From assembly GCA_965655095.1 (NCBI GenBank), contig OZ296649.1, forward strand, positions 83,576,001 through 83,640,000: a stretch of DNA of 64,000 bases, in the 5' to 3' direction. This DNA is from Haplodiscus bocki (Eukaryota). The notes beneath the pieces were generated by a model that worked only from the letters and a program-made list of their open reading frames with translations, ran no database searches and was not told the DNA's origin. The translations under genes and the position numbers were made by a program. Below, piece after piece: positions 28,581 to 59,159 of this stretch (position 1 is the first letter of the stretch; each line of letters opens with the position of its first letter).

Positions 28581-28676
28581 GGCTAAGGTAAATAGTTTCC
28601 TTCCTTGTTTCTCCCAGCCTTTTTTTACTGGTGTCTAGGATTAATTTCCCGGGCTGAGGTAAAAGAAACTACAATC

Positions 28677-34521: not shown

Positions 34522-34796
34522 ATGGAAGTGACAAACGACGTGAATGAGCTTCAAGTGCTTCTTCGGGAAAAAGATGCAGAATTGTATGCACTGACACAGC
34601 TTTTGAAAAATCGGGAACTTGAGATCGAACAATTAAGAAGTAAACTTCACCAATATCAATCTATTATCCAGCTTTCGAGCCAACCATTTTCAAAGGGTCG
34701 AGCTTATGGAATTTCGGCAGAAAGCTGTAAAGCGGGTACTAATGACGTATACAGCCTGAAACAGCTTGAGTTGGCGAAATTCTTTAAATCTGACAG
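34522..34796 (+). CDS. PRKG1: cGMP-dependent protein kinase I, alpha-like first coding exon (copy 1)
   Basis: EIEQLRSKLHQYQSII / RAYGISAES / AKFFKSDR match vertebrate PKG I-alpha EIQELKRKLHKCQSVL / RAQGISAEP / RKFTKSER (recalled). Phase-2 donor AG|GTTAAC at 34797; upstream acceptor-like tttgttccag (34510); alternative in-frame ATG at 34450. Confidence 0.85.
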
Positions 34797-36526
34797 GTTA
34801 ACTTGAAAAAAAATATATCTTCGATTTGGTTTAAGATTCGATGATTGTACTGCCGTCAAGTAAATTCCAACCCAATTGCCGGTTCCATCGATAGATAAAG
34901 CTGTGCGCAAATCTTCGCAGCCGTGTTTAATTTGCTATAGAAGCATTGGAGCAACTAGTTAGGATATGAGACGCATTATAAGTACACTCGAAAAAGTTCT
35001 GCACACGCAAATGTTTAATGTTTGTGAAATTGTTTCTAAATTGGTAGGTGCTCAACAGTTTTCAGTTGCTCAACAATAAACATCTCGAAGTTATTTCACA
35101 CAAATGTTTCGAAAAGCAACCAAAACTTCTTTCATCGCACAAAGTTTACACATCATCATAAGAATTGATGAACAGTACGGCGAAGAACTCAACAAGCAAA
35201 CTATTGGAAAATTTTACTGTGACTAATTTGTGAAATGTTTCGACTTCCGAAACAAATGCTCCTTGAAAATTGCGGAAACTGCAACAATTGGAAAAAGATA
35301 TGTACAAACCTTATGAACTACACGGACCGAGTACGAGTTCTAACTCATACGCAAATTTCTACTTCTATTTCTACTAAATAATCTTGCTCCGCAACTTTTC
35401 TCAATATGAACGCGGACCAACAAAGTTTGGAGCCGAGCAGGGGGCAAGAACCATTACTCGTATTCGGAGATGAGGATATTTATCTTCTTTTCGAGCCTTT
35501 GAAAGACATTGGCGTATTTTTTTGTCTCAACGATGTCATCATCATGAACTTTTTTGATTCAGAAACTCTTTCAAGAGGTATATAGTCTTTTGAACGTGAA
35601 GAAAAATTTAGCAGTTTTTTTGTCTCCGAGACAGAAATCCATATTGTGAAACGTAGGTCCGTCGCGTCCTATTGTGGCGATTGCAGAAAAGCTTTTCCAA
35701 CAAAACAAATATTGAAAGGCTTGAAATTTTACAAAGTTGGGCGACAAAATTTATTTCGTACAAAAATGAGTAGAAAGAAGGCCTGTATTCTGCATTGTTA
35801 TTTTCCGCCGTAATATATTACGAAAGGATTATCAACTCAAAATGTAGACTTTTTCTCCAGTGATTTGCCAATCTGGTTGTGTCAACTGTGAAACTTTCCA
35901 AAAGAATTTTCCGCTATAAATGTTCCCCTGGACACGACACGTAGAATGTAATTTTGAGATTACCAGTTTTTGTCTAAAACTTTACTTACTGAGCTAAGAG
36001 CGAGCCTCATCACACCGTAGGCTGTCTAGTTTGTCCGGAAATTTTCATTTTTGAGCATTTTCTGACCCACCGTCGATGGAAAATATCGCAACTCAACTGC
36101 GCCTCTTGTCACCCATTTCTCAGCTCACCCATTTTTCAGCTCTATGATGTGCTTTTCCTGTACTTCATTCTGAATTTCAACATTGTGTTGAAAGTCAGAT
36201 TTGTTTAGTGTCGATGGAAACCATTCGAAAGAACACGACATTCGTCTATCATCAATATCTTTCACAGAATCCAATAAATCGACTCCAAACGACCGAAATC
36301 TTTTCCTTCTCAAGAGTCATAAAATGGGGAATTATGTGAATCTCAACAGCGATATCGATTTCACACGAGAAAAGCCTTCGACCACGATTCGAAGTTTTTA
36401 TGGGAATATTTTTGAAATTTCTGCAATCGAGATACTATTTTTTCTTGAAAATAAATGTCACATTTCAATGATTCATTTCAAATCCTTGTCGGTTTGTGTG
36501 TAAGGTTTGTTCCAGAACAAAATGAA

Positions 36527-36801
36527 ATGGAAGTGACAAACGACGTGAATGAGCTTCAAGTGCTTCTTCGGGAAAAAGATGCAGAATTGTATGCACTGAC
36601 ACAGCTTTTGAAAAATCGGGAACTTGAGATCGAACAATTAAGAAGTAAACTTCACCAATATCAATCTATTATCCAGCTTTCGAGCCAACCATTTTCAAAG
36701 GGTCGAGCTTATGGAATTTCGGCAGAAAGCTGTAAAGCGGGTACTAATGACGTATACAGCCTGAAACAACTTGAGTTGGCGAAATTCTTTAAATCTGACA
36801 G
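36527..36801 (+). CDS. PRKG1: cGMP-dependent protein kinase I, alpha-like first coding exon (copy 2)
   Basis: Same peptide as copy 1 (one synonymous CAG>CAA change); same donor at 36802. Confidence 0.82.
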
Positions 36802-38159
36802 GTTAACTTGAAAAAAAATATATCTTCGATTTGGTTTAAGATTCAATGATTGTACTGCCGTCAAGTAAATTCCAACCCAATTGCCGGTTCCATCGATAGA
36901 TAAAGCTGTGCGCAAATCTTCGCAGCCGTGTTTAATTTGCTATAGAAGCATTGGAGCAACTAGTTAGGATATGAGACGCATTATAAGTACACTCGAAAAA
37001 GTTCTGCACACGCAAATGTTTAATGTTTGTGAAATTGTTTCTAAATTGGTAGGTGCTCAACAGTTTTCAGTTGCTCAACAATAAACATCTCGAAGTTATT
37101 TCACACAAATGTTTCGAAAAGCAACCAAAACTTCTTTCATCGCACAAAGTTTACACATCATCATAAGAATTGATGAACAGTACGGCGAAGAACTCAACAA
37201 GCAAACTATTGGAAAATTTTACTGTGACTAATTTGTGAAATGTTTCGACTTCCGAAACAAATGCTCCTTGAAAATTGCGGAAACTGCAACAATTGGAAAA
37301 AGATATGTACAAACCTTATGAACTACACGGACCGAGTACGAGATCTAACTCATACGCAAATTTCTACTTCTATTTCTACTAAATAATCTTGCTCAGCAAC
37401 TTTTCTCAATATGAACGCGGACCAACAAAGTTTGGAGCCGAGCAGGGGGCAAGAACAAGCATGTGCAATTCATGGAATTATTTCTTGTTGTGAAATTTTC
37501 GAAACACTTGTACTTTTTAATATTGAAGGTGGAGATAATATTGGAACGAGGTCATGTCATTTTTCCGAGGCCTGCGAATGTGAATATGATGTAAATCAGC
37601 AACAGTTTGAACGCCATAGGTGTGGTCTTGAGTGGCCAATTATCTTACTTATTGAGTTGTGCGGCCAATCATTTCATCCAAGATCGCTTACGGTATGCAT
37701 TCCGTGTGTCAATCGTTTTCCTCGTTTAGGCCCCCAGAGGACTACGCGGAAGATGTCGAATTTTTAACTATCACAAGAATTCCTTCTTTTGTTTATCGCT
37801 CCTTTGAAGTTATTCGAGTTTTTCGTTCGAATATAATACTACCCTCAGAGCTTCTTCCTCAAATTTTTTTCGAGTTCTATTCACTTTCCAGAAAAAAAGC
37901 CACCGCTTGCCGACTTTGTTGAGTTTTCGAAACTGGCTCTGGGGATGTCATATGGGCAAGAAAATATTTTTGCTTCACTGCTCCTTCAGCTGTGAGGCTG
38001 AAGAAAAAAACACGCCACTATCTATGAGTTGGGCATTTTACTTCATAGAATGAAGACACTAAATACATTGAATTTACAAAAGATTTTTCCGGTACCGTGA
38101 CATCCCCCTCTTGCATAAAGTTCTTCGATACCAGAAACACCCAAAAGCCTCCCCCCTCG

Positions 38160-38380
38160 CGAATGGAATGTCTTTGTGAGACAAAAAGTTATCGATATCT
38201 TTTTAATGATACCCCGCTCTATGGTTTACCGAAATTTTCATGCCCCATAAATGCACAGCACCACTAATTTTCAGAAATACCTTAAGGGCCCCCTCACCAA
38301 TTTTTTCGTTACTGTGAGACAAAGTTTTCGATATTCTTTTTTGATACCGCCCTCTATGGTTTACCGAAATTTTTGCGCTC
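38160..38380 (+). repeat. Degenerate tandem repeat (tgtgagacaaa...ctctatggtttaccgaaatttt, two units)
   Basis: Two ~70-bp near-identical blocks ~140 bp apart; related sequence near 42440-42580. Confidence 0.6.
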
Positions 38381-41300
38381 GACAGATCGGCACCGCAGAC
38401 TAACTACAAATGCACCATGTAGTATAAAAAGGCATTTGCTACTGTTACAATTCCACTTTTCAACAACTGTTTCAAGCTTCAGTCTCGTTATAGATTGTTT
38501 TTTGAATCAAAACTGGGCCTCCTCCCGCCCTGAGGCGCCATGCTTTCATTTGGTAGCCCCAGAATGCGGTTTGTAGCTTTGTGCTTCACTTTTTTAGCTC
38601 CGTCAGGGGCCTATTTTGACAACAAAATTTTCCGCTTTAAGTATTCCTCTGGACACGCAGAATGCAGTTGACAACACCAAATGTTTTGGGAGAAACCTAG
38701 TTATGATTCTAATAATTGAACTTTTCCCCGGCTTTTTCGTTTCGGTTTTTCGTTCTGATTCATAAGAAACCAAGAATAAAAAACTATCTTTGGATCTGAT
38801 TTTGCTGGAACTTCTCGATTATTGATCCCTGCATGCTAAAAGAACCAAAAGTAATTAATTTGCTAGAAGTTGAAACTCACTTTTCTCCAAAACTACTTTC
38901 AAATTTTTCATCAGGGTGTCACTCGACAGCCTCTTTCTCGAAGAGGACATTTCGAAAGAAAAACCTCGAATTTGTTTTTCGCGTCCGCATATTGGCCAGC
39001 ATGAATCGCCAGAAATGAAATTGTTAGTTAATATCGATTTTCAATCCCCTTTGTCAAAAACTTCAAGCTCAAATTTTGCATCATAGGTTCAATCGACATT
39101 AATTTACCTAAGGAGGCCTGTTTAGTAGAAAAATAATTGGTTTTGTTCCTTCCGTCGATATCCTGAAAGTGCAAAACTTGAATAAAGTGTCATTAGTTTT
39201 GAGATATATCGGCATTCATTCATTTCTATCAATAACTTTTGGCTTGACTTTTTTCATCAAAGACTGAATTAGTAGCTTTAATTCTGGAGGAAAATTACAG
39301 ATTGTTTTCCTTCTGTCAAAGTGTCAAAATGCTTTTGATATTGACATATCTTGGCATTCAAGTTCGTACTTCTTCGACACCAACTACTTCACTCATAAGA
39401 AAAAGGCTCTCAACAATTTTTCTCTTGGAGGTAAAATTTTCAAAAAAGACCATCAATTTCTTCTCTGTGTCTGCATCCTGACTGCCGAAAATGCCAAATA
39501 TGATACATATAAAGATCTCGGCTCCCAAAATCAAATTCTTCCACAACTGTCAGTTTGAGTTCCTGCATCCTAAAAGGGACCGTCAACGCTGTTCCTGAGT
39601 AGGACGGTTCAATAAAAAAAACCGGTCGGCTAGCACCGTCAGTTTTTCGCCCATTTACCAAAATTTCAACTGTTGCAAACAGTTCAGAAAACGAGTCTAG
39701 TTTTTGAAAGGTTTTCCACTATCAATTCCACGACTGATTTTCACAATTTCTGGCATTATCGACTTTCTGAAGCAAAGTACTAAGCCTAAGGTCTTTTATC
39801 TTTTGAGAATTTCAAACTATCTTGTGAGATCTTCTTAGTGGAAATCCAGCCAGCACTTCTGGAGAAAATGAGTTTGACTATAAGGAAAAGCCACTAGAAC
39901 TCGCACTTTTCTTTTCAAGCTAAAAGTCTGCTAAGAAAGGGAGCTTTTTTCGGAATTTGTCGAATAATCTTTTGCCAAATGAAAAATGTCCACTGATGAC
40001 TTGCTGGAAGATGTCCCGTCGGTAGTTTAGAGAGATGAGTTGAATCTCGAAAAGAACATCATGCATATGCAAGTTTTGGAATTCTCAGCCAACCATGTTT
40101 CTGGCTGAAATCAAAACGCAAGGTTCACATTTCAAAACAGTTCGACTTTTAAAACTTGCCTTGATGAATAAGTGCAGCCGGTAGCTGTGGGAAAAAATTG
40201 ATTTTAATACAAAGAGTTTGTAAATTTTGGCAATTTAGGCCTATCAAATTATCGAAGAAGGGATAGCAACAAAAGATATGGATTTTGAATATTCTTGTGG
40301 GAAAACACAAATAATGAGTTGGACAGCTGCTTTAAAGGAAACCGAGTTTGAATATCAAGACGAATCCTACCAATAATCAATTTTTGACTAGTTTCGCCCA
40401 TCAGGTCTCCGTTGCATGGAAACAAATGCATTCTTTGACAGTCAAGAAAGTTTTTAGGACTAAAAAAGTCGATTGATACACTACTGGACGAAATGCAGCC
40501 AGTAGTCCGGAGAACAAGAAGTTTGATTCTCAGGAAGAATCAAAAAGTTTTGTATTTCTAATTTTTTTCGGGCCTTAAAGTTTCCGATGCAAGAAGTGTT
40601 TCCCAAAATATTGCGACTGAATGATGCTCTACGTTTGCAAAGTTGGTAATTAGTTCGTCGATGTGAGTAATTCAGTGGATCGTTTTGAAAAGCTCGATTT
40701 TGAAAATCTAGATATTTTATATGGCTATGCAATTATTGGCGCTTTCCGCCTATCAAGCTTGTGTCGCCTGTAACCAAGAGCAAGAAGCTACTTTCCTGTA
40801 TGTTTTTACAACTGATAAAAAAGTCGACTGAAACCTTGATGATTAAAAGGCAGCGAGTTGTTTTCGGGAAAGGCAGTTTTGTTTTTCAGGAAAAATCGGA
40901 CTGATTCCAATTTTAGGCTATATTTGTACATGAAGTTTGAGATTCAATGATTCGTTATCATTGAATGGTGTTCTGCAGATAGAAATGTGGTTTTTGAGAC
41001 CGCAATAAAGTTCTTCTGTTGGCCGGAATCGAGAGAGCTGTTTTGGAAATGAGCCTGTTTATCAAGACAGTTCATACAAAAATGCACTTCTTGACATTTT
41101 TCCGATAGAGTTCACGTTTCGAAGAACCAAGCATACTTTTTGCCGCTCGAGTAGCGTTTCACAGGTACAAAACGTCGACTGACAATGATTGAAGAAACGT
41201 AGCCCGTAATTTTGGCGAAATTTAGGTTTGATTTGCGAGAAATCAATCCTGTGTGCGTTTTCCGGCTAATTCCATCCATAAAGATTCTCATGGACGAAAC

Positions 41301-42825
41301 GGTATCGAAGATTTTGTTGCTGAAAGCTGTTTCGCGAAATAGACACTGTCGGTTGAGACATTGATAGAACTGTTATAGCCAGTTGTATCGAAGAAAACTG
41401 AGTTTGATTACCAAGGTTGATCTTTCGTAAACGCAGTCCTTTCTAATTTCGGTTGCAGCGGTTTCCATTGGAAAAATCAAATAGCAAAAAATTCATGATT
41501 GAACGCCATTTTACAAGGTGACAATAGTCGAGCAGGACGCTGATGGATGAAAATCAGCAGGATGTTTCTGAAATTCAGGTTTGAATTTGGATAACAAAAA
41601 TACTTTTCCGATATTTTTAGCGGAATTGATCCTTGTCTCAAAAGCCAACTTTTAAAACCGAAGTTTTCGATAACGGAGGATCTTATACAGGTGAAAATTG
41701 TCGTTTCGGTCGTTTTGGAAGAAAACGATTTTGAGTTTCGAGAACAATAGTTACCGTTTTTCTTAACCTGGTTTTACTAAGGATTTTACTACCCACATAA
41801 CGTCGTAATCCATCAGAAATGGTCACGAATTGCTTTTTTGGTGTTTCAGGTCGAGATACAAAAACATTATACTGGTACTCGAGGATTCTTTTCAAGGAAA
41901 TCATTCAAATTTCGAACATGGAATTCAATTTATGAAATGAAGATAAAAATTTCGGATAGTTGAAAATTATTGAAAGGTCTGATTTTTGCCAACGTTTCTG
42001 GAATCCAGAGCGTTTAGTTGATTCCTTTATGTGAAAAAGGAATGTCTGCGGAAAACAGAAAAACCCTGAATTATTGCGAAAAACTTGTGTAGGAAAAGAA
42101 TCGAAAATGTACAAAGTTTCAGCAAACATAAAACCAGCTCGTGAGAGAATTGGTGAGTTCTCTGTTGGGGATACCTATTTACGGTGGCGCCGCATGTTTT
42201 TTTGTACCAGAGGCTATTGAATCTGCAACACGAAGTCTTTGACGTTTGCAATTTCTGGAAAAAGTAACGAAAAAACTCCACCAGTCGACGCTGTTCATCT
42301 TTTTTTGCGGATGCTTCGATAAACAATAGGAGGCTATCACAAGAGGTTTCGAGAACTTTCTATCTGCCTTTAAAATTTCAAAGGAGGCGCTTCTGTTCGT
42401 TGTAAGAATTTCTGGTTCAAAAAACTGGGGTATCACGTTTTTCTATAAATTTTTAATGCTGACATGGAAGTTTTTTCTGAGAGAACCATTGAGTATTTCT
42501 GAAAGTTTCTTGCTTCGGAAAACTTCCTGTGTAAAAAAAAGGGGTGTACCACGATTTTTCCTCTCGAGATTTTTCTCACAGTAGCGAATTATTTTGACTG
42601 TTCTTGTAACTGGGGAAAGCACTGAGGATGAAAAGTAGGAAATTCGTTGTGATCTTGAAAACAGTAATAAATGTAATGATGGAAAAATAGTACCTACAAA
42701 ACTCAGCTTTTGATTTCGTGAAGGATTGACTAAAATCGGCGGAAATTCTTAATTTTAATGGGAGTTGAAAAAAACGATCCTGGTGTTTCGGAATTTTATT
42801 TATAAAGTTGAATTTTTTTGTAAAT

Positions 42826-42993
42826 GCTGGGTTTCGAACACGTACATAGCCCATTAGAACCCTTTTGTCCTACCCGCTGAGCCGTGGGAACCATTGGAAG
42901 ATCTGAAAAATATCGGTGGAATCAAAAAATTATGACACGACTGAGATTCGAACCTGGACCTACTGCTTAAGAATCTTTTGTCCCAACACCACT
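42826..42993 (-). repeat. Two adjacent tRNA-derived (SINE-like) segments
   Basis: - strand: AGTGG...GGTTCGAATCTCAG (A/B-box-like) and GGCTCAGCGG...GTTCGAAACCCAG; no complete cloverleaf. Confidence 0.45.
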
Positions 42994-44399
42994 TCTGAGA
43001 CTTATAACTGAAAAAGAGTTGGCAAAAGCCGATCGAAAAGAAGAGAAACGATTGTACGGAACGAATAACTTTTCTGACATTTATGACATTTAGGTGGTGA
43101 GAACTAATAATCGATTTTTCCTTTTTGTCGGTATCCTGATTGTGCTAAAAGCGCCATTTTTTTCGACTTATTTTAATATTCAAATTGAACTTTGGCAAAA
43201 AGTAGTTGCTCCAATTCCATCAAGGTTTCAATCATCAGCGTTTTGCCGGTGGGGGACTATGACAATAAAGATTTCAATGCTTTTGTTCTTTCGGGAGCCT
43301 AGTTCACAGAAAAATGCCAAAAAGCTGCTGATAATAGACTTATCTTGACGTTCAATTTCATATTTCTTCAACGCCAACTGCTTCACTTCCCAAGCGAAAG
43401 CTAGCAACAGCTTTTGTCAGGAAGAAAACTTTTCAAAAGAAGAAGCATATTTTTTTTCTCTGTTGTCGTATCCTGACATGTCAAAACTGTTATTTATGGT
43501 TATAGACCTCGGTTGCCAGAATCATATTTTTCCACAACCAGCACTTCGAATTCTTCCCTCAACAGCTCAATCGTCAGCTCTATGCATGAGGACAGCTTTT
43601 GAATGCATTAATCATGGGCTCTAATCCTTGCATCGAAAATGCGAAAAGTCCTAATTTGATTTCAATTTTGATTTTTCCAGATGTTCAATTTTCTCCATAA
43701 CTATCGGATTGACTTCTTCCGTCCAGGTGTTCATTGATAGCGTTTTATTAGTAGAAAGCTCTTTCATTTGGATTTCTTTGATTTTTTTTACAAGCAGCAG
43801 GTTTTTCATGATCGACGAAAAGTTCAATTGTCATTGTTTTTTGTCGACTTTCAACTCATAGTTTTCTAAAGCTCTCGGTTTGATTTCTTCCAAGAATGTC
43901 GCAATGGACTGTTGCCTATTTAATCGAACAGATTTTCAGAAGTTTTTGCTGTTTGTTTGATCAATCCTTTCTACAACCCTTGACTTAAAATACTGCAGTG
44001 CAACTGCGCCTATTGTATAAATAGTGTTTTTAAAAGGAAATCGCCCTCCTTTGCATTTTCACATTTTAGTTTGCGAGTATTAAACTCTAATTTGTTCTTC
44101 AGTCAGATTTTTTTACTCAATATTTGGCCAGTTTCAACTTTTTCCCGACTTTTCCATATTTTATATTCTTATGAGATTTTATTTGACAATCATTTCAGAG
44201 ATTTTATTTGACAATCATTTCAAAAAAATCAGCCCTTTGATATATTGTGATTTTAAAAAATTTGATGCAAAATCGAGGAAATTTGAATAGTGTCTATCCT
44301 GAAAGTCTCGTCTAATACGTGTAATTTGTAATTCGAAAGGTATTGAAAAGCAAAACAATATCGTCTTAGGCGAGCGGAAGGATGCCTTTTTGCACAAGG

Positions 44400-47300
44400 A
44401 TACGTCAAAATGATTTCGTTTTTTTTCCGTCCGTGACATCCCTCTGCGTTTCATCTTTAAATCTATTTTTCTCGGCAACTATTGGCCAGAATCATCGGAT
44501 TTTTGCGTAAACACTACGGCAGGTTCACGATCTATCATTTTCCGAACTTTCGGCCGCCGAGATTTTTTGTGAGTTATTAGTGATAAATATTTCATTTTTC
44601 GTATTTTTTAGAGGTCAAACGGTTTTTTTTTGAGTCCTGTCTGTACAGTAAGCTTCGAAATGCTAATATTTTAGCCGTAATCGATCGAACACTTTTATTT
44701 CAAGCTGTGTGTTGTTCTAGTTTTTGCCAAAAATTTTTTTCCGGCCAGTTTTCGTCAAAAAAGCTCAATATTTAGAATTCGAAACTGTTTCGACATTCCT
44801 CATTGCCCACTGCGGTCCTCAAATTTGACGCTTTCTTTACAAACGTATTTGGAGGATCCGTTTGCTAATTGCTTAGCTGCATTAGCAACGTCGTACTTGA
44901 CCGGGGCTGGGTTTTTCGCCAGCCAAAAATCCTTCGTCGGCCAGTTTTTGGCGAAAATAATTGAAAACCCAGATTTTTTCACGGGGCAAGTATTACTTTT
45001 TCAGATATCTGTGCCCTAATATGCCGTGTATGGTATCCCAATACTGGTTAGGCGATGGAATATAGAGCTTTAAATGGATGCAGTCTTTATCCGATTACTT
45101 CTTGATTTTTCAGAATTTTTTGAACGAAAATTTTGACTTTTCAAATAAATTTTTGCCTCGAAGTTTAGCGCGTTTAGCATGCCTTTAAGTGATACATATC
45201 ATTTGATATGAGGAACAGTTTGAGCAATGTGTATTTTCAATGAGTTTTTTTGCAAGTTTTGACTGTGAGCGTTTTTTTCTGATGTATTTATTGCCAAAAT
45301 TTGTCAAGAACTGGGTTTCCTCAACCATTGTCGACTCTTCCAAAAACTTTTTATCCATTTTCACAAACAATCAAAGTAGGCCGGGCTTCATGATGTTCAC
45401 TGGTTTGCCTGGAAAAGCAGGTGAGAGCAGTTCAGGTTACGCTCGGTCGTAGATAGGTGATCTGGCCAATGTTGTCTTTGTGTGTAGAACAATTTTTTTC
45501 AATTGTTTTTGCCCTCTGCGATAACTTATTACGACTCTCATCCCCTGGAACTTTGCCTCATGTGTGGTGTGCGTCTACTATTATCCTTCAGCTTCTCCTG
45601 ACTGCCCATGTGAACTCGGGGTTGCGCCAAAAAATCTTTTGGTCGAGTTTTCTGAGAATATTTATCGAGAAAACACGAATTTTTGGGAAGATTTTTGTCT
45701 CCGGTTCGTTGTTTTTTACTTTAATGAACAGTTGTCAACTTTCGGAACCTCGCTGCTCTGAGACAGCATTTTCTAAACAGCGGCTGTCTTCCGCTGACTT
45801 TTGAGCTGACAAAATTTTCTTGCTCAGCTAATTTTCGTTTGAAGTTAGGATAGTTACCTTGAACCTCCGCTGTTATCTCATGGATGTTTTCTGCCTAATC
45901 TCCCCAGATTTCGCTACATGCCCTTTGACATTGCATAGGCATCTGGTCATCGTTGTAGGCAAGAGGTTGAGTACCATCGCGAGCATTTCGCTAAGCACCT
46001 TAGCGCCTGTGTTTTGTTTTTTGTTTTTCAAATATGAAATTTTCAGGTGCTGTTTTAGGTTCGAGGGATTCTGTTTGAGTGAATGATATGGACAATTTTT
46101 CCGTAAACATACAAAAATTTGACAAAATTATGTTAAATATTGTGAAAATTCATTTCAAAAATTGGATTGTAGCGTATTCCAATTCTGATTGAAAAGAAGA
46201 ACGTGTTTTGCAAACTGGCTTTTCTTTTTTTTTTTAGTTTTATCCATAACTTGCTTTTTGTGACATCAGAAACTCTGGCGGTGTATTGGAAAGGAGCAAA
46301 AGCAACCTTTGGCATGTGCCAGGTACATTGTTTGTGCGTTGTAGAAGGTGCTACTCTGGTAAATATTTGGTCTGGAAAAAATCAACAGCGTCCCAAAAAT
46401 CATGTTTCACATAACATTGTTTTGTCAATACTTTTAATGTCTTGTATGTGAAAAACTGTTTGTGTTATGTTGCTCGTCTCCGCGTACTTGACTGTGCAGA
46501 TAATGAACTTTAGGCTGCGAAATAGCAAAAGCTGATGAGACATTATTGACGGATAGAAATTAGTTTTTTTAGGCTTTTGACAGGTACTTGTCTCAAATCA
46601 ATTTTTGAACAAACCTAATGACAGCCTGTGTTTTAATTCCCAAAATGTCAACGAAATCTTCCAGCATGTTTTCTGAAAAGTCTCTCAGGACCTTTGATCT
46701 GTAGTGGCAAGTCAATGTGTTGCGAAGTTCCGCTTCGTTTCTGTCAAATAACTCACAAAAATAAAAACTTGTACACTAGATGGAATTCTGAAAGACTTTG
46801 TTCTCTGTCTGAACTTTTTCGAAATATTTGGCCCGTTGGATTAAACGTATTTGTGAAATTGCTAAGAAGGGTGATTCCTCTTTCATACTACGGTTTTTGC
46901 AAGAACCTGAAAATCACAAGTTATCGTCGAGACAATGATTTTTCAAATTTGCGGCTGTTTTTGTCCTACTTTGTGCTTTTCTCTGATACTGTCAAGATGC
47001 CTGTAGTGTACTAAATAGACTCCCAAATTGGCAACTCCGCAGTGTTTACACTTCCAAACAACACGGTTTGTTTTTAGTAATGACAACCTTCACATTGTAA
47101 TAACGTTGAGAATGATATTCATTCTCAGATATTGTTTATGTTTCTTGAAAGAGTAAAAACTGGGGGGGGGGGGGTGAATAAACGTTCGATTCTCTTCTCG
47201 CAATATTAATTCCAACAAATAAAACATCAACCGAAACACTGAAAATGAACAAAGTTTCCAAGAATTGATAGTTTACTGAAAAAGAAACAAGATGTCCAGC

Positions 47301-49090
47301 TAACACTGCCTTTCAGATAAGAGAATAAACTTTGAGAAGCAGTAATATCCACGAAAATATGTACAAACCCTTATCGAAACTCTTTGATTTTTCTGATTTT
47401 TTTTGCAAAACTTACAAGTTCTGGCAGAAATCTTACACTGGGAAAAAGACTTCCTTATCGGATGATTTCTGCGAAAACTTTCCAAAAATGACGAATTAAA
47501 ATTTTCTAGCGTAAACTGTTGCTTTATCATGCAATTGGAAAATTTGATGTTGAAACAAACCAGAATGCTGATCATTTGTTTTGTTTTCTATAGATGAAAT
47601 GAGAGCGAAAAATAAATAATGAATATAGGTGCATTTTATAGCGATGTCACAAAATCTGCGAAAAAGATGCATCGAAAACATAGGCACCAAGGTGCTCAGC
47701 GAAACGCTTGCGATGGTACTCTAGAGATTAGGCACCGAAGATAAAAAACAATCGAGCTGGAAAAACTTTTAGTTCAAAACTCATTGAAAACCAGTTGCCG
47801 TTTGGCAATTGTATTTTCAGAGCAGCAGGGTGCCAAAAATGACAATCGGGGTTTTAGGTAACATACGAATCAGGGAGAAAAAAATGTCCCAAAAACCGGT
47901 GTTTTTCCGTTAATTTTTCTCAATTTTTCAAACTGAAAGTCGTATTAACACTGAAAGGACACTGAAAAATTTTAAGGGACTACACCTGAGGCTTTGTTAT
48001 CCATATGATGAGAGAGGTACTCAATTATAGCGAAAGGCTGAAGCGATTGGAAAAAAATGCTCTGTATCTAAAGAGTACCTTGGGCAGGCCCCTTGCTACG
48101 AGGAAACACAGCCTCGAAAGCTCTCGAATGATTCTCCAGGCATATCAGTAAGATTTATGGAGCCCAGCTCACTTCTGTTATTTGTACAACGAGATAAAAC
48201 GTCTTTAGAAAAGACTCAAGTCTTAAACTTATTTTTTTTTGACATTTTTCGGCAATAACTTGTTGACAAAAGATCGTTCGGAGTCTAAACTTCGTCAAAA
48301 TGCCACTAATGTACACCTCGTTTATTCTTTTCCTCAACGCATGTGATATGCATCATAATTAGGCACGTTGAATGCGGAAGATACGCCGCCAAAATGTTGT
48401 GAAAAAAATTCGACTAATTACTCTGCAAGTAACGCTTCACTTTCCATCGCTCTGCAGCATTGAGATGGCATGCATGGAATGCTGGGCCACAAAATTGCGG
48501 TAAAATAGGAATTGCCTTCTCAAAAAACATAGCTTTTCAGTTGTTCTCGCTGAGAACTCGCACACAGCTGTCGAAACTTCCGGTCCGGTTTGTTAACGAC
48601 CTTGCAAATGCAACTAAGCAAGAAACGAACGGATCCTACTAATGAATTTGGAGAAATTTCGGCGTCAAAGTTATCAATACACAGTATATCAAAAATCTAT
48701 TTCAAAAATTTCGCGAATTTATTCTCTTTTATCGGCAAAAGCTGGCCTAAAAACTTTTCCTCAATTTATCGAAACCTGCCGCTCAACGGAAAGGTTTTCC
48801 CTCGATTTGTGCATAAATTTTAGTTAGTTAGCTAGTCAAGGTTAATATGAAGGCAGGACTAGAAAGTATAGGCGTTGCCCTCTGAAAAATCCGAAATTTG
48901 ATTTTTTTTCGCTAAGACGTCGCCGAATAAAAATTCGGTTGCCGGAAATTTGGGATATGATGGATCGTGAACCCGTCGTAGTGTTTATCCAAAAGTCAGA
49001 TGAATTCCAGCAAGAAGTGCTGAGAAATGAAGATATAAAGAGATGAAACGCAGAGGGATGTCATAGACGAAAAAAAATCATTTTGACGTT
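44400..49090. mobile_element. Foldback/long-TIR non-autonomous element or two inverted copies of one repeat
   Basis: 44400-44570 is an imperfect inverted copy of 48925-49090 (tgacatccctctgcgtttcatc, taaacactacg..ggttcacgatc); inner inverted pair 45969-46008 / 47682-47721. Confidence 0.6.
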
Positions 49091-50282
49091 TCCTCTTGCG
49101 ATTAGGTTTCGCTGCGCTGGCTCAAAAACATGAAAACGAAGTGCTTTTGGGCTGGGTTGAAATAAATCAGAAAACACGCTGAAGATTGCTGCACGTGATG
49201 AAGGCTTCAGAGCAAGTGTAGCTGATTCCTTGCTAGAACACTTGGTGAAAAGTTACATTTAAAGCCCCTTAAATATTTTTTACGAGCTCCACGAAGTTTT
49301 CGGACCGCTTTTCTGAAAGAGAATTAACCCTTGCACTTTCCATTTTTTCAATAGCCGTCAAGTAACAAAAATTCCCGATGAAATTAGTATGAAGACCGAC
49401 TTTGACGATCTTGCTCTGAAAAACTCCCGAAAAAGGCTGTGATAATTTCCTGACCTGTGATATTCTCTATTAGTGTCGCGAAAGTTAACCATTGTGTGAA
49501 AAAACCAATCAAGCTTTTTCCAGGTTTGAACAGTGGGAAAAAGTGAAAGAAACACGGGTTTTTTGGCTGTTTAGCAAATTTTTCCGCCAAAACTGCACCG
49601 AAAAACTTCCAATAGTTTTTCAATGTAATGGGGCATCAAGAAGGGTTGTTTTCGCAGCGATTCGACTAACATAGGCACCCATTGCATGCGCATGGTACTG
49701 ATGTTAGTCAGTTGCGACGATTTGCCCGATTTTTTTTGGCGTTTTACTTTATTTTCGTTAATAAGTTCTCGGCGAAAAGTTTTCGGAGGCCGAGTTTTTG
49801 AGAAATGGTCAGTTTCAAACTTGCCGTACCCCTGTTCAAGAAACTAGAAAGCTCCAAAAAATTCGCTCTAAGATTTAATTCTTTAATGTCAAGAAACGCG
49901 GAGGGATGTCATTAGAAGTGAGCAAATTGGCAAAATGTGTCGGAAAAAACGACACGAGCCCTTGAATTTTCCTTTCCATATATAAAATATGGAGGCGGAA
50001 AGTAACAATAAGTTGTGGGAATTAAGAAGTGGAACTTGTACCTCTGTAGAGCTCGATGATGAACGCATAATTAATAACGGCGGGAAAGACATTATAAGAG
50101 CGTGGTCGTGTCCTCATTTTTCAAACTTGACAATCTGGGATATGATCGGAAAATCCATTGATGTGGTGTTAAACATTACGCCTACGGGCAAGTCTTGCTC
50201 ACACGCTAGAAAACCTGTATGCACACAAACGGTGCTGTAAGTCCAGAAATCACCCACCGCCGCTGCATGTTAAATACATTTG

Positions 50283-50736
50283 CAACAAGACGTCCGGCTA
50301 CCATGGGCGTATTTTCCGCCTTCCCATTTTTGTAAAGAAGGCGTTTGAGAAGATAAACGTTTTTTTCCGAAAAAACACTCCATCGTATTTTCTAATTTTT
50401 CAAACTTTGAAAGGTTTTCTGATTTTTTGCCAAAAAACCTCATAATTACAGCGGAAAACATTTCAAAAAAATAATACCATTTGATATGCTTTCTACAGCA
50501 AATTTGCCACCTTTAGCGATTTTGAAAAAATTCAAGTTTTCGATAAAACGCATCTATTTTTTCAAAAAACCCCAAATTTTGAACGTTTTGAGAAATTTTA
50601 CTAATTGAGTCGCATTCAACGGCAAATGTGCTACAATTTGGTTAAAAACGAACTTAATTGGCAAACTGGGGTTAAAAAACGTTCTCGTAGAGTGGATGAT
50701 TTTCCTGCCATATCATAAATATGGTGGAAAATAATA
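50283..50736 (+). repeat. ~450-bp MITE-like dispersed repeat (copy 1)
   Basis: aagacg.ccg..tacca start, cattctac.gcaaatttgc cores, gagtggatgattt..., near-terminal inverted tattttccgcc / gg.ggaaaata. Confidence 0.7.
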
Positions 50737-53672
50737 CGAGTTTTTTATATCTGTTCTTTAATAATTGATTTTTGAGAGAATTTATATGATTTGCGTTCAC
50801 TTGAAGTTTTTCTTATTTCCTCAATCAAAAATTAAAACGTTTCAAAATTGTCATGAAGCGAGATATTTGTAGGCTTTGTTTTATACTTAGACACTTCTTT
50901 GAATAGCTATTCGTCTAATTTTGTATGTCAATTTCTTGATTAAAAGGCTAAGTTTGTTTGGAAACGAGCTAGTGGAAGTTCAATCTTGACTTTTGACCAA
51001 ATGTTTTGCGGAAACGGTATAGTAGAACAAATTCCTGCGTTCCATCTTCAATTGTGAAGAACGACGTGTTTATCAATGCTGCGAAAACAGTATTTGAGGA
51101 CTTTGTTCGGAAACTTTCTATTACGTTGAGTCGAGAGAATTTAATTTTGAACATTTCTCTTTTATAGAATGATAGTTGACTAAGTTCGTCGATAATTAAG
51201 TTCCAAGGGGGCCTGTTTCAAACAAAAACATTAGTAAAAGAGCTGGAGCGAACAATAAAACTATTGAAACATTTGCGGCAGAGTTGGAGACATTGTTTCA
51301 GCTTGTCAGGAAATCGAAAGATTTCAAAATACCAACGTTCCCTGACCTTCACGACATAGAAGGTGGCAAGATTAGAAGTTCAGAGCCGGATCGAAAGGCG
51401 GGCTGAACCATCTTATATAAAAATTGTTTTCATATATAAAACTACTGGTTTCGATACTGGGCTAGCAGTGTTCTAAATGTTGATTCCTTCACTTCTCTAT
51501 AACGCCGAAAATGCATATAGAAGTGAATTCAAATTTTTTTTTAATCTTGAGTCAAAATGACATTATGAAATTAGAATAAGTGTCGGTCGATTCTTTCCTT
51601 TCTTCACTATGCCTTGTATTTAATTTCGATCGGATTTTGACGTCAATATCCTACAACTACGGATGAGGAAAATAGTTGACACGAATTGACAACTGTGGTT
51701 CTCGCAGTAGCGGAAGCTAGCGAAGCGACTCCAGAAAAGCCCACAGCAGAACGTTGTAGAAATAATTTGTTTCCAATCATCTCAAAATGTCATTATTAGC
51801 ATCTGAAAACGACATGGTAAGTTTGATCTTGCCTTAACACAGTGCGGAAGCAGCCTTTATTAATATGGAAGGCGAAGGTGAAGGTGAAGATAGCATTCAA
51901 AACAAAATCGTGTTCGTTTTTCTTGTCAAAATGGCCGCACTATCTAAGGAATGGAAGTTGACTGGCAGAAACTTAATAAAAATTCTACATTATTGATAAT
52001 ATATATTGATTCATGCACCTCGATCAACCGATATAGTAATATATTTTTCTTTGAAGATTTTGACGGCTGCGCAATTGGCTGTAGGGTCAACTGCTTGCTC
52101 CAAATTTTGAAATGAATCGAACTTTTTTATCACATTAAAGAACCATGCAATCCTCGCCAAGTGTGCAGGCGAAAAAAGTTTAAATATTTTTGTAAAAGAT
52201 TTTACGAAGGATTTGTCATTGAAATTGTATGTCGTCTATGTGTTAGACGTCGGAAATGCAGAAACGATAATTTCAATTTAATTCAATTTTTGTGTTCCTG
52301 AAAAGGGTTTTTTTTCGTTTTAGAATGCCTCGATTAACGGTAACAATCTTACATAATAGCATGTTTTCTTGTTTCTACAATCTAGCCTTGCTTTGTTTCT
52401 GATGCGTTTATTAAACTTTCTATTGACAAAAACTCTGGTGAACCGAATTAAAGGGGGGGTCCAATAAAAAATTCTTGGACAATAATAGGCGGGGTCTAAA
52501 AATAGACATTATGGCAGCGCCTAAATGCACCTCGAACTATGTCTACACGTTTTAAATATAGACGTTTCAATGAAGCTTCTGCATAACGAATTTTGCATTT
52601 ACTGAAACGGAAGATGACCGCTTCGCAAAAAATAGGCCATTTCTTCACACCCGTCCGTTCTTGAAGATGCCGAATTTTTAATACTGGGTTATTATTGGAG
52701 GGCGGTGTTACCGATTTCAATTCGTGGGACCTATATGGCACCCTCCCGTTTATTAGGTACACCAGAGCATTATAAGTAACTGATGTTTGGGGTTATGCTT
52801 GCTGCATGTTTGTTTATTTCGTAATATCCGGAACATGAAACAGTTATAGACTTCATGCTTGCTTTTGATCAAATTCCTTTTCGTGGAGCAACAACTGATT
52901 TGAATGAAAGCTCAAAACTATTGAAAGGTGACGCAAACTATCTAGTTTTGGAAAATCTTGACGCCGAGATGTTCCACATGTACTCTGCTAACCATAATTG
53001 GAAGTTGGTTTATATCGAAGGGTGGTCTGAAATTCGAACAATATTGTTCTGCACTATATGACACTTCGAAGTTCAAACCATAATCAACAATAGTGAAGCA
53101 GACTTTGCCTATCAAAATTGACAGAAGTTGAGTTCCTTTTGGATGTAAAGTAAAGTATTTTGCGAGGTGGTGGTTATTCAGGTTCCTTGTTTTTACCTCT
53201 CAGAAATAACGCGGGCGGTAACCTCCAGTTATTTGAAGCACCAAGTTTCGCAACTTGATTTTTAATGTCAGTGTTTCGAGCCAATGGTGACTATCGTTCA
53301 TCAACCAAGAATGAGGAGATGGGATAATAAATATGTTGCATGTTGTGTACGAAGTACAGGTATAGTCACAGTTGGGAGAGGAAAAATTATTATATAGCTT
53401 TATGATGATGCTGGTGAACAGACAGAAAAAGCAGAGCGGATATTAATCCACATTCTAAATGCAATTTTGTGAGCCAAATTTTTTGCTTGGCGTCCGTTTC
53501 CGTGTGAATCTCATTACTGCTGATATATTGCACACCACTGTGACGCCGTGTACTCCAGCACTGCCTTCCGTTTACTAAATCGAAATGAAAATAAAATTTC
53601 AAAGAAAAATGCAAATCACAGCTAGGGAATGAAGCTTCATTTAAAACCGTGCCTTCATTTTTCTATCGTTCT

Positions 53673-54146
53673 GACCAATCAGCAATTGTCCTTTGCATCT
53701 GCATCAAAATGTTTATCTGCAAGTTCCAACATCAAATTTAAGAAATTCGGTAATGCTTATTAAACTGCTTTCATTGGTAGACCAGAATAATTTCTGTTAA
53801 TATCCGGTGGCAAAATCACCATTTGATACTAATTGTTATGCGTTCATCAGTATAAGTTACATACTGCCGAAATGTTGAACAAACTTACACATTGGAGCCA
53901 TTCCGATAGGGTTTGTGTGCACCAGAAGCAGAAAGGAAAGGAACAAAAAATGGCCATTATTGAAGACAAACCCCGAGTAATAAAAGAATGTAGTTACATT
54001 GTTACATCATGTAAGTACGAAAATAATTGGCTTAGAAGCGATGAAAATTTGAAGTTCATCTTCTTCATAGACGCGGTACTGTCATTTTAACGTCGTGGTA
54101 TTACAAGTGGGCAATATTTTCTCGCTTCCATTAATTCTCTGATTGG
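53673..54146. promoter_or_regulatory. Candidate CCAAT boxes upstream of the PKG I-beta-like exon
   Basis: gaccaatcag (53673) and ctgattgg (54139) match the NF-Y CCAATCAG consensus, in non-repetitive sequence upstream of the exon. Confidence 0.3.
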
Positions 54147-54283
54147 TAGATAACTTGAGGGGAGCTACACGGCTGTTAATTTATTTTTATTCAGAAATGT
54201 TTGCAGGAGTTTTCTTCAGCTTCACTCTAAAATGCAATGGCTGTGCTCTTTTTTAGCGTAAGAAAACATCCGTACCTTACCAA

Positions 54284-54654
54284 ATGCCCCGGCAATTTGC
54301 GCGGAATGATAAAATGTCTTTCTGCTTCTCGTGTCTACAGCATAAAAACGGACATGAGAATTTTGAAGAAAAGCTTAATGCCAAAGAAGATGAGATCCGC
54401 GAGTTGCAGATTTTACTGCGACAGAAGGACGCCGTTATTGCGAATCTTACTAATGAAATTCGTTATCTCAAAGACAATCACCTGCCCACTAAAGCTAATT
54501 GTAACATTGCAGTCAGTCATGCACCCCCACCTCATTTAAATATGGGCTCTATGTCGCTATCCAAAGTTAAACGTGTCGCCGTTTCTGGAGAGCCATCTGG
54601 CGAAAAAATGAGCGACCAAAAGAGCTGTCTGAAGTCGTACGAGAAGTATAAACA
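54284..54654 (+). CDS. PRKG1: cGMP-dependent protein kinase I, beta-like alternative first coding exon
   Basis: IRELQILLRQKDAVIANLTNEIRY / KVKRVAVSGEP / LKSYEKYKQ match PKG I-beta [25 protein letters not shown] / RTKRQAISAEP / LPFYPKSPQ (recalled). Perfect phase-2 donor CA|GTAAGT at 54655; start may be ATG 54314 (MSFCFSC). Confidence 0.85.
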
Positions 54655-54792
54655 GTAAGTTACCCTTCTAATCAATAAACAGTGACTGTTAGTGATAAAG
54701 CCATTGCTACTTTGCATCTAAGGGAAGGATGTGGCGCATTGCTTTAAACGCTGTTCAATTTGAAGCAACTTTTTGGTTAGTTTTATTTTCAG

Positions 54793-54810
54793 GAAAGGCA
54801 TGTCTGTAGA
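54793..54810 (+). CDS. Candidate 18-nt symmetric (phase 2-2) micro-exon of PKG
   Basis: ttttattttcAG|GAAAGGCATGTCTGTAGA|GTGAGT; in frame, no stop (Q-KGMSV-E/D). Confidence 0.4.
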
Positions 54811-59070: not shown

Positions 59071-59159
59071 TGACATCAAGCCGATCTTTTTCACCTAAAT
59101 CTGAAAAGGCAGCTTCCTTTAAAAACAGTTTAGCGGAACAATTGGTTGTGTTTCCGAGT

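What the first reader, a model, noticed from the sequence alone, without database searches (positions are those of the whole stretch)
34522..54660. Vertebrate-style PKG I-alpha / I-beta alternative first exons in an apparently invertebrate genome
Seen: two different leucine-zipper + autoinhibitory exons ~18-20 kb apart, both ending in phase 2 (AG|gt completing Arg; CA|gt completing Gln), so each can splice to one shared exon starting with a purine. Established: mammalian PRKG1 uses I-alpha (ends KSER) then I-beta (ends KSPQ) first exons. The order, the pseudosubstrates (RAYGISAE vs KRVAVSGE) and the terminal residues correspond. Inference: the alpha/beta architecture may be much older than vertebrates.
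Basis: partly seen in the sequence, partly recalled or inferred. Interest (0 to 1): 0.75.

Follow-up and report, generated by a model that had tools for sequence, protein, structure and literature searches.

The report
Alternative first exons of worm PKG

Summary
Exon A (34522-34797) and exon B (54314-54655) each encode a leucine zipper and a pseudosubstrate, and each ends at a phase-2 GT donor.

I found the predicted shared exon 1.6 kb past the window end, on a contig 100% identical to window 44314-64000. Its acceptor is ttttttag|A. That A completes Arg for exon A and Gln for exon B. The exon matches human PKG I (82 bits) far better than PKG II (50 bits).

A distant relative has the same order: A, then B, then exon 2. 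Only these exons and a CCAAT-rich block upstream of B are conserved in DNA. No acceptor within 210 nt upstream of B's ATG allows productive A-to-B splicing.

A profile of A-type exons hits the human I-alpha zipper (E=1.9e-10) much better than I-beta (E=2e-3). The B type matches no PKG chain. It resembles I-beta only in its pseudosubstrate pattern (K-x-K-R-x-A-[IV]-S) and its position. So I-alpha ancestry is supported and I-beta orthology is unresolved.

No RNA data exist, and the kinase body beyond exon 2 was not reached.

Exon A is present twice, in a recent 2-kb tandem duplication. The scan had already noted this duplication on this same window (s1-366753).

Alternative PKG N-termini are already known in flies. 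I rate this a new member of a known kind, of moderate interest.

The parts
34522..34797 (+). Exon 1A, copy 1. I-alpha-type first coding exon with a leucine zipper of about 6-7 heptads, the pseudosubstrate RAYGIS, and the end ...FFKSD + AG. Donor AG|GTTAAC at 34798, phase 2.
   Evidence: heptads. A profile of seven A-type exons hits the PKG I-alpha zipper 1zxa at E=1.9e-10, against E=2e-3 for I-beta 3nmd. It shows 8 differences in 276 bp against the 92%-identical version L001, where flanks show about 7 per 100 bp. It is 60% identical in the distant relative.
36527..36802 (+). Exon 1A, copy 2. Same protein as copy 1, with one synonymous difference and the same donor.
33443..37453 (+). Tandem duplication of a 2006-bp unit (33443-35448 and 35449-37453, 99.55% identical). 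Each unit carries exon 1A with about 1.08 kb upstream and 0.65 kb downstream.
   Evidence: The region is single-copy in the 92%-identical version L001. A read-derived contig of run X1 lies on 35422-35621 with no difference. It carries the end of the unit followed by the start of the unit with the copy-2 letters.
54314..54655 (+). Exon 1B. Second first coding exon with a conserved start M[SA]FCFSC, a zipper of about 5 heptads (EDEIRELQILLRQKDAVIANLTNEIRYL), a variable linker, the pseudosubstrate KVKRVAVSGEP, and the end ...SYEKYK + CA. Donor CA|GTAAGT at 54656, phase 2.
   Evidence: It is 73-75% identical in the distant relative, with the same donor position and phase. It shows 8 differences in 342 bp (4 synonymous) against the 92%-identical version L014. 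The reading frame upstream of the ATG is not conserved.
53433..54153 (+). Colinear series of short conserved blocks upstream of exon 1B, likely its promoter or regulatory region. It includes AGAGCGGATATTAATCCAC (53433), ATGAAGCTTCATTT (53629) and four CCAAT-type motifs: ACCAATCAG (53674), CATTGG (53890), ATAATTGGCT (54023) and CTGATTGGTAGATAA (54139).
   Evidence: The blocks occur in the same order in the window, in the 92%-identical version and in the distant relative, while the sequence around them no longer aligns. No such blocks were found upstream of exon 1A.

Best explanation
The window holds the 5' part of the PKG type I (PRKG1/foraging-type) gene of a marine invertebrate. The gene has alternative first coding exons. 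Exon 1A is present twice because of a recent tandem duplication. Exon 1B lies 18-20 kb further on.

Each exon supplies a complete N-terminal module: a leucine zipper for dimerisation and partner binding, plus an autoinhibitory pseudosubstrate. Each ends two bases into a codon. Either donor is spliced to the acceptor of one shared exon 2, at window-equivalent 65617, 1.6 kb past the window end. That exon starts the first cGMP-binding domain.

The result is two kinase isoforms with the same cGMP-binding and catalytic body. They differ in zipper and in pseudosubstrate: R-A-x-G-I-S in 1A and K-x-K-R-x-A-V-S in 1B. By analogy with mammalian I-alpha and I-beta, they should therefore differ in partners and in cGMP activation threshold.

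Exon 1A is the orthologue of the vertebrate I-alpha exon. Exon 1B is an old paralogue of 1A with its own conserved CCAAT-box promoter region. Whether it descends from the same ancestor as vertebrate I-beta is open.

Shown: the exons, their phases, the shared acceptor, the conservation and the I-alpha affinity. Inferred: actual use of both junctions, mutual exclusivity in RNA, the separate promoter and the functional differences.
For: Exons and donors:
- Both exons and their phase-2 donors can be read directly from the sequence.

Exon 2 in the window's own contig:
- L010 is 100% identical to window 44314-64000.
- Exon 2 lies at L011:7378-7544 on the minus strand, with acceptor gcttcttgttttttag|A.
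- The first base A gives AGA (Arg) after exon 1A and CAA (Gln) after exon 1B.
- Exon 2 matches human PKG I at E=1e-22 (82 bits), against 50 bits for PKG II. It starts at the first residue common to I-alpha and I-beta (PMC10299703; PMC9417419).

Same architecture in a distant relative:
- The order is A, 7.1 kb, B, 9.1 kb, exon 2, with the same donor phases and an acceptor ending ag|A.
- Between the two genomes only the exons and blocks upstream of B align.

Other points:
- The A-type profile hits the I-alpha zipper at E=1.9e-10, against E=2e-3 for I-beta.
- Other genomes hold A-type exons that all end KSxR at the same point.
- Every AG acceptor candidate within 210 nt upstream of B's ATG gives a stop when entered from exon A.
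- Both exons show a reduced substitution density against the 92%-identical version.
Against: - No RNA run exists for this organism in the tools, so neither junction has been seen in a transcript.
- Exon 3 and the kinase domain were not found within 17 kb (this genome) or 10 kb (the relative) after exon 2. The full kinase body is therefore inferred from exon 2 alone.
- The exon 1A donor GTTAAC is a poor match to the usual consensus. It is conserved as GTTAGG in the relative, and GTT donors are reported as common in this genome (note s1-366661).
- dN/dS between the close versions is not low: 5 nonsynonymous to 3 synonymous changes in A, and 4 to 4 in B.
- Pfam PKcGMP_CC matches to the single exons are below threshold.
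Confidence: 0.8

Rival explanations
1. Exon 1B is the true orthologue of the vertebrate I-beta exon. On this reading the two-first-exon I-alpha/I-beta architecture was already present in the common ancestor of acoels and vertebrates.
For: - The order is the same: the I-alpha-like exon upstream and the second exon downstream.
- The junction with exon 2 is the same.
- The B pseudosubstrate K(P-5)-V-K(P-3)-R(P-2)-V-A(P0)-V-S has basic residues at the positions described as I-beta-specific (R73, K75, R76) and Ala at P0, as in KRQAIS (PMC9417419).
- Exon A has R-A-x-G-I-S, as in I-alpha RAQGIS.
- The Smith-Waterman score of B is slightly higher to the I-beta zipper than to the I-alpha zipper (55 vs 49, and 54 vs 52 in the relative).
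- The close version ends ...EKSKQ, near the vertebrate KSPQ that I recall from memory.
Against: - HMMER finds no PKG chain with B, as a single sequence, as a profile or with its C-terminal part, even at E up to 10.
- The I-beta zipper scores as well with exon A as with exon B (54 vs 55).
- Exon A also has the LRxKDA and KSx motifs.
- From memory, PKG II and the PKA regulatory subunits also have LRxKDA-like zippers or basic-basic-x-Ala/Ser pseudosubstrates, so convergence on the kinase's substrate consensus is plausible.
- The terminal Gln is Lys in the relative.
- No B-type exon was found outside these related contigs. That search reaches only close relatives.
Confidence: 0.3
2. Exon 1B is a lineage-specific duplicate of an A-type exon that arose within the acoel lineage. 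It later converged on a canonical basic pseudosubstrate. Its likeness to I-beta is analogy, not shared descent.
For: - A and B are as similar to each other as either is to a vertebrate exon (SW 64-78; BLASTP E=4e-6; hhalign aligns ELQxLLRxKDxxIxxL).
- Exon duplication is active at this locus. There is a recent 2-kb duplication of exon 1A and a tripled heptad block in the relative's exon 1A.
- No B-type exon was detected elsewhere.
Against: - B is old enough to be shared by two lineages whose introns are saturated.
- B is better conserved than A between them (73-75% vs 60%).
- The match of its pseudosubstrate to the I-beta pattern, the same exon order and the same junction would all have to be coincidence or convergence.
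Confidence: 0.4
3. The B isoform does not come from its own promoter. It is made by spliced-leader trans-splicing, or by use of an upstream non-coding exon, onto an acceptor just upstream of the exon 1B ATG, from a transcript that starts further upstream.
For: - Another agent's note says this worm trans-splices a published spliced leader (s1-376373).
- A strong acceptor-like site, gctcttttttag|C, lies about 57 nt upstream of the B ATG.
- A similar site, ggtttgttccag|A, lies 11 nt upstream of the A ATG.
Against: - The 720-bp block upstream of B, with four conserved CCAAT-type motifs, looks like a promoter.
- The acceptor-like site upstream of B is not conserved in the distant relative's alignment.
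- There is no RNA evidence either way.
Confidence: 0.15
4. One of the exons is an unused relic, or the two belong to separate genes.
For: No transcript evidence is available.
Against: - Both exons are intact, with conserved starts, donors and phases, in four genome versions. The DNA around them has diverged beyond alignment.
- No other coding body lies between A and B or between B and exon 2.
- The only compatible acceptor found is that of exon 2.
Confidence: 0.05

Closest known systems
Mammalian PRKG1 I-alpha / I-beta alternative first exons
   Same: - There are two mutually exclusive first coding exons.
- Each encodes a leucine zipper, a linker and an autoinhibitory pseudosubstrate.
- Each joins a common exon that begins [ST]KDLI[KR].AILDNDF, at the same residue.
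- The upstream exon is I-alpha-like: RAxGIS, ending KSxR, with a zipper profile hit to 1zxa.
- The downstream exon has a KR-x-A-[IV]-S pseudosubstrate like I-beta's KRQAIS.
   Different: - The second exon has no detectable specific sequence similarity to I-beta.
- It has a shorter zipper and a Cys-rich start, M[SA]FCFSC.
- The I-alpha-type exon is tandemly duplicated here.
- Introns are 11-31 kb rather than hundreds of kb (the vertebrate figure is from memory).
- Use in RNA is untested.
Drosophila foraging (dg2), the PKG I orthologue with four promoters and several N-terminal isoforms (PMC10299703)
   Same: It is an invertebrate PKG I gene that makes isoforms differing only at the N-terminus, through alternative promoters and 5' exons.
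   Different: In the fly only one exon (exon 4; isoforms P1, P1-alpha, P3) is reported to carry the zipper and the autoinhibitory sequence. The other isoforms are described with different N-termini. Here both alternative exons carry a complete zipper-plus-pseudosubstrate module, as in vertebrates.
A-type first-exon ORFs in other genomes (P0002-P0004, P0006, P0007)
   Same: They share the same layout: M..LQEL zipper, [RK]xRAxGISAE, ending KSxR, followed by intron read-through.
   Different: Their organisms are unknown to me. No second first exon was seen within 8-10 kb downstream in the two loci long enough to look (L005, L009).

Membership tests
PKG type I (PRKG1 / foraging orthologue) | N-terminal leucine/isoleucine zipper | tested here: met
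   The A-type profile hits PKG I-alpha zipper chains 1zxa, 4r4l and 4r4m at E=1.9e-10 to 5e-8. The heptad pattern covers 6-7 heptads in A and about 5 in B. B alone is only weakly recognised (Pfam E=0.011, Atlas 0.92).
PKG type I (PRKG1 / foraging orthologue) | Autoinhibitory pseudosubstrate with Gly or Ala at P0, between the zipper and the first cGMP-binding domain | tested here: met
   A has GRAYGISAE, and the motif R..GISAE is invariant in seven A-type exons. B has KVKRVAVSGEP, invariant between the window and the relative. Compare RAQGIS and KRQAIS in PMC9417419.
PKG type I (PRKG1 / foraging orthologue) | Start of cGMP-binding domain A of type I rather than type II | tested here: met
   Exon 2 (55 aa) scores 82 bits (E=1e-22, 71% identity) against human PKG I and 50 bits against PKG II.
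PKG type I (PRKG1 / foraging orthologue) | Two complete cGMP-binding domains and a C-terminal AGC kinase domain in the same gene | tested here: inconclusive
   No further exon was recognised within 17 kb (this genome) or 10 kb (the relative) downstream of exon 2.
Vertebrate-type I-alpha/I-beta first-exon architecture | Two alternative first coding exons with compatible phase, joining one common exon at the isoform boundary | tested here: met
   Both donors are phase 2. There is one acceptor, ag|A. The boundary aligns with the first residue shared by I-alpha and I-beta (89 and 104 aa in PMC10299703). The same holds in the relative. This is DNA evidence only.
Vertebrate-type I-alpha/I-beta first-exon architecture | Mutually exclusive use of both junctions in transcripts | not testable with these tools
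   No RNA run is on record for this organism. Indirect support: no productive A-to-B acceptor exists.
Vertebrate-type I-alpha/I-beta first-exon architecture | Upstream exon orthologous to I-alpha | tested here: met
   The profile scores 44 bits to the I-alpha zipper against 21 bits to I-beta. Smith-Waterman scores are 68-79 against 49-54. The RAxGIS and KSxR motifs are shared.
Vertebrate-type I-alpha/I-beta first-exon architecture | Downstream exon orthologous to I-beta | tested here: inconclusive
   No HMMER hit to any PKG chain. Smith-Waterman scores are 55 to I-beta and 49 to I-alpha, and exon A scores 54 to I-beta. Only the pseudosubstrate pattern and the position agree.

The most novel reading that the evidence does not exclude
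The PKG I gene already had two alternative zipper-plus-pseudosubstrate first exons in the last common ancestor of acoels and vertebrates. One was I-alpha-type (RAxGIS) and one I-beta-type (KRxA[IV]S), in that order, joined to the same exon 2. On this reading the I-alpha/I-beta regulatory split is a bilaterian-level invention that was kept for over half a billion years. The acoel B exon is a fast-evolving I-beta that may have gained a Cys-rich, possibly acylated, N-terminus.
Probability: 0.27. Interest if true: 0.6.

Novelty: new member of a known kind. Interest (0 to 1): 0.4.

Why it matters
In mammals, I-alpha and I-beta differ in binding partners and in cGMP sensitivity, and the split is usually treated as a vertebrate feature of PRKG1.

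This locus shows that the I-alpha-type exon and the exact exon 1/exon 2 junction are much older than vertebrates. It also shows that an invertebrate keeps a second complete regulatory first exon in the I-beta position, with what looks like its own conserved promoter.

That gives a concrete, testable case for asking whether dual-isoform regulation of PKG I is ancestral or arose more than once. It also gives a natural pair of N-termini with which to test how the pseudosubstrate type sets the activation threshold.

It does not change the known mechanism. Alternative PKG N-termini in invertebrates are already documented in Drosophila.

Tried and rejected
1. Exon 2 inside the window. Motif scans of all six frames of 54660-64000 found none. 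It lies just outside the window.

2. RNA evidence. Two run searches found only four runs of unknown kind that also hold the flanks, so they are probably DNA. I used the single read-laying run on the duplication instead.

3. Full-length relatives.
- The word-based search sees only proteins of similar length. It returned first-exon ORFs from the same or close genomes.
- The exhaustive representative search with exon A returned six first-exon ORFs and one spurious repeat protein, and no full-length PKG.
- So I could not build a phylogeny of N-terminal exons across named taxa.

4. I-beta affinity of B.
- The single sequence, the two-sequence profile and the C-terminal 35 aa were each searched against solved structures. 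None gave a PKG hit.
- Profile-profile comparison of A-type and B-type aligns only 19 columns.

5. A second first exon downstream of A-type exons in two other genomes (L005, L009). None was found within the 8-10 kb available, which says little.

6. Exon 3 and the kinase body. Walking the contigs found none within reach. A conserved block in intron 2 proved non-coding.

7. Literature. Four searches found no paper claiming I-alpha/I-beta-type first exons outside vertebrates. Head et al. 2025 (J Exp Biol) is not held.

8. Organism identity. I could not establish it with these tools and rely on other agents' notes.


Full report
**1. What is in the window**

On the + strand there are two stop-free stretches, each starting at an ATG and ending at a GT.

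- Exon 1A, 34522-34797, reads MEVTNDVNELQVLLREKDAELYALTQLLKNRELEIEQLRSKLHQYQSIIQ...SKGRAYGISAES...FFKSD. It ends with AG before GTTAAC.
- Exon 1B, 54314-54655, reads MSFCFSCLQHKNGHENFEEKLNAKEDEIRELQILLRQKDAVIANLTNEIRYLKD...MSLSKVKRVAVSGEPSGEKMSDQKSCLKSYEKYK. It ends with CA before GTAAGT.
- Both have a heptad pattern with Leu/Ile/Val at position a. It covers 6-7 heptads in A and about 5 in B.
- The two peptides are 30% identical over 70 residues (E=4e-6).

The rest of the window upstream is transposon sequence:
- a hAT transposase at 19411-21051;
- a copia-type RT at 23884-24636;
- a LINE at about 27960-32480.

**2. Are they PKG exons?**

Taken alone, each exon is only weakly recognised:
- Pfam PKcGMP_CC gives E=0.026 for A and E=0.011 for B, both below threshold.
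- Exon A hits the PKG I-alpha zipper 1zxa at E=0.02.
- Exon B hits nothing in the PDB.
- The language-model search puts PKcGMP_CC-bearing clusters first for both exons, at 0.95 and 0.92.

The exhaustive search with exon A found first-exon ORFs in other genomes.
- All carry [RK]xRAxGISAE and end KSxR before reading through into an intron.
- One exception, P0006, continues KSGG.
- A profile of these seven sequences (A1) hits the human I-alpha zipper at E=1.9e-10 (44 bits) and the I-beta zipper at E=2e-3 (21 bits).

Exon 1A is therefore an I-alpha-type PKG I first exon.

**3. The shared exon**

Exon 2 is not in the window.

The protein of exon 1B is on record on an ENA metagenome-assembly contig, ERZ26859043 ctg87008 (255 kb).
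- The fetched part of that contig is 100% identical to window 44314-64000.
- It is therefore the same sequence continued past the window end.

Walking downstream along that contig gave exon 2.
- It lies at L011:7378-7544 on the minus strand, which is window-equivalent 65617-65783.
- The acceptor is gcttcttgttttttag|A, followed by ACC AAA GAT TTA ATC AGA GAC GCG ATA CTG GAT AAT GAC TTT.
- This encodes [32 protein letters not shown]...
- The first base A completes AGA (Arg) after exon 1A and CAA (Gln) after exon 1B.
- The 55-residue peptide matches human PKG I at 82 bits (E=1e-22, 39 of 55 identical), against 50 bits for PKG II.

The first full codon aligns with the Ser that is the first residue common to I-alpha and I-beta:
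- it aligns with chain residue 36 of 7lv3, which is PKG I-beta 71-686 (PMC9417419);
- the isoform-specific parts are 89 and 104 residues long (PMC10299703).

The junction is thus at the same place as in mammals. The intron from 1B to exon 2 is 10,961 nt. From the two copies of 1A it is 30.8 and 28.8 kb.

**4. Conservation**

Four genome versions are available.

- W is the window.
- W' comes from the same ENA sample and is 87-93% identical in DNA (L001 for exon A, L014 for exon B). It is a second haplotype or a sibling lineage. Its letters also appear in run X1 (place 34636).
- R and R' come from another ENA sample (ERZ25074608).

In R:
- Exon 1A (L002 10001-10390, 60% identical) ends AG|GTTAGG.
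- Exon 1B (17521-17874, 73-75% identical) ends AA|GTAAGT.
- Exon 2 (L004 19470-19627, 94% identical) follows tgttgattag|A.

The order and phases are the same, with introns of 7.1 and 9.1 kb.

Between W and R nothing else aligns except a set of short colinear blocks upstream of exon 1B. So both exons are under selection.

Against W', exon A has 8 differences in 276 bp and exon B has 8 in 342 bp. Flanks show roughly 5-7 per 100 bp.

Within exon B the zipper and the pseudosubstrate region are invariant between W and R, while the linker varies.

The reading frame upstream of M[SA]FCFSC differs in all versions. That Met is therefore the start.

**5. Mutually exclusive first exons**

- Each exon has its own complete zipper and pseudosubstrate.
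- Every AG within 210 nt upstream of the exon 1B ATG, when entered from the phase-2 end of exon 1A, is out of frame or meets a stop.
- Upstream of exon 1B, at 53433-54153, a series of conserved blocks stands in the same order in W, W' and R. It includes ACCAATCAG, CATTGG, ATAATTGGCT and CTGATTGGTAGATAA.
- From general knowledge, these four are CCAAT-box motifs in both orientations. I read the block as the promoter of exon 1B.
- No such blocks were found upstream of exon 1A.
- Exon 1A is preceded by an acceptor-like ggtttgttccag 11 nt before the ATG, so it may have an upstream non-coding exon or take a spliced leader.
- Other agents' notes on this genome report an acoel flatworm with spliced-leader trans-splicing and many GTT donors. 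I did not test these. The GTT donor of exon 1A, in both W and R, fits the last point.

**6. Is exon 1B I-beta?**

Points in favour:
- its position downstream of the I-alpha-type exon;
- the shared junction with exon 2;
- its pseudosubstrate. K-V-K-R-V-A-V-S has basic residues at P-5, P-3 and P-2 and Ala at P0. That is the pattern described for I-beta (R73, K75, R76, KRQAIS; PMC9417419). Exon 1A has R-A-Y-G-I-S like I-alpha's RAQGIS.

Points against:
- No HMMER search with B hits any PKG chain at E up to 10. I tried the single sequence, the two-sequence profile and the C-terminal 35 residues.
- Smith-Waterman scores of B are 55 to the I-beta zipper and 49 to the I-alpha zipper. Exon A scores 54 to I-beta, so I-beta does not prefer B.
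- A and B share ELQxLLRxKDA and KSx with each other.
- The terminal Gln is Lys in R.
- From memory, a basic-basic-x-Ala pseudosubstrate is also the PKA RI type, so convergence is possible.

I conclude that I-beta orthology is unresolved. My estimates are about 0.3 for orthology and about 0.4 for a lineage-specific duplicate.

**7. Tandem duplication of exon 1A**

- Units 33443-35448 and 35449-37453 are 99.55% identical, with 8 substitutions and 1 indel.
- Both copies of the exon encode the same protein and keep the donor.
- W' has one copy.
- A read-derived contig of run X1 matches 35422-35621 exactly. It joins the end of the unit to the start of the unit with the copy-2 letters. Only 27 letters lie left of the joint, under the tool's 31-letter rule.
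- The runs may be the source of the assembly, so this shows the joint is in reads, not that it is independent.

**8. What is known, and verdict**

- Alternative I-alpha/I-beta first exons are textbook for mammalian PRKG1 (PMC9417419, PMC10299703).
- Drosophila foraging makes several N-terminal isoforms from four promoters. Only one exon is reported to carry the zipper and the autoinhibitory sequence (PMC10299703).
- I found no paper in the held library that describes I-alpha/I-beta-type paired first exons in an invertebrate. That library is incomplete.

The evolutionary claim is only half supported: I-alpha yes, I-beta open.

Limits of this work:
- there are no transcripts;
- the kinase body was not reached;
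- the organisms behind the comparison sequences are unknown to me.

I rate it a new member of a known kind, interest 0.4.

Noticed in passing
window 33443-37453: A recent 2006-bp tandem duplication (99.55% identical) carries exon 1A with its flanks. It is single-copy in the 92%-identical version L001. The joint is present in a read-derived contig of run X1.
   Followed up: yes
window 27932-32484: The LINE (endonuclease and RT ORFs at 29811-31265 and 31422-31901) is absent from the 92%-identical version L001, whose alignment jumps from 27931 to 32485. It is therefore a polymorphic or recent insertion.
   Followed up: partly
window 33732-34163 and 35748-36179: This stretch inside each duplicated unit has about 600-2500-fold contig depth in all four runs, so it is a high-copy repeat lying about 400-800 bp upstream of exon 1A.
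   Followed up: no
L012:13957-14109 (-), window-equivalent about 68878-69030; in the relative about L013:3341-3493 (-): A conserved non-coding element lies in PKG intron 2. GGGAAATGGATTAATGTGTTTTTAATT (27 nt) and GGATGCCCCTTGAAG are identical between the two distant genomes, with stops in all frames. It may be an enhancer.
   Followed up: partly
window 54314-54334; L002 17521-17541: Exon 1B starts with a conserved Cys-rich motif M[SA]FCFSC in all four versions. It could be an S-acylation (membrane-anchoring) signal, functionally like the myristoylated start of PKG II. This is pure inference.
   Followed up: no
L002 10001-10200: In the distant relative, exon 1A is 38 residues longer at the N-terminus because the block ELQxLLRxKDAEL is repeated three times. 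This is an internal heptad-block duplication.
   Followed up: no
L001, L014 versus window: The same ENA metagenome assembly (ERZ26859043) holds two versions of this locus that differ by about 7-13% in DNA, at similar coverage (32-43x). They are either very divergent haplotypes or two sibling lineages in one sample.
   Followed up: partly
window 19411-21051 and 23884-24636: An intact-looking hAT transposase ORF (DUF659 plus hAT dimerisation domain, 546 aa) and a copia-type reverse-transcriptase fragment lie upstream of the PKG exons.
   Followed up: partly
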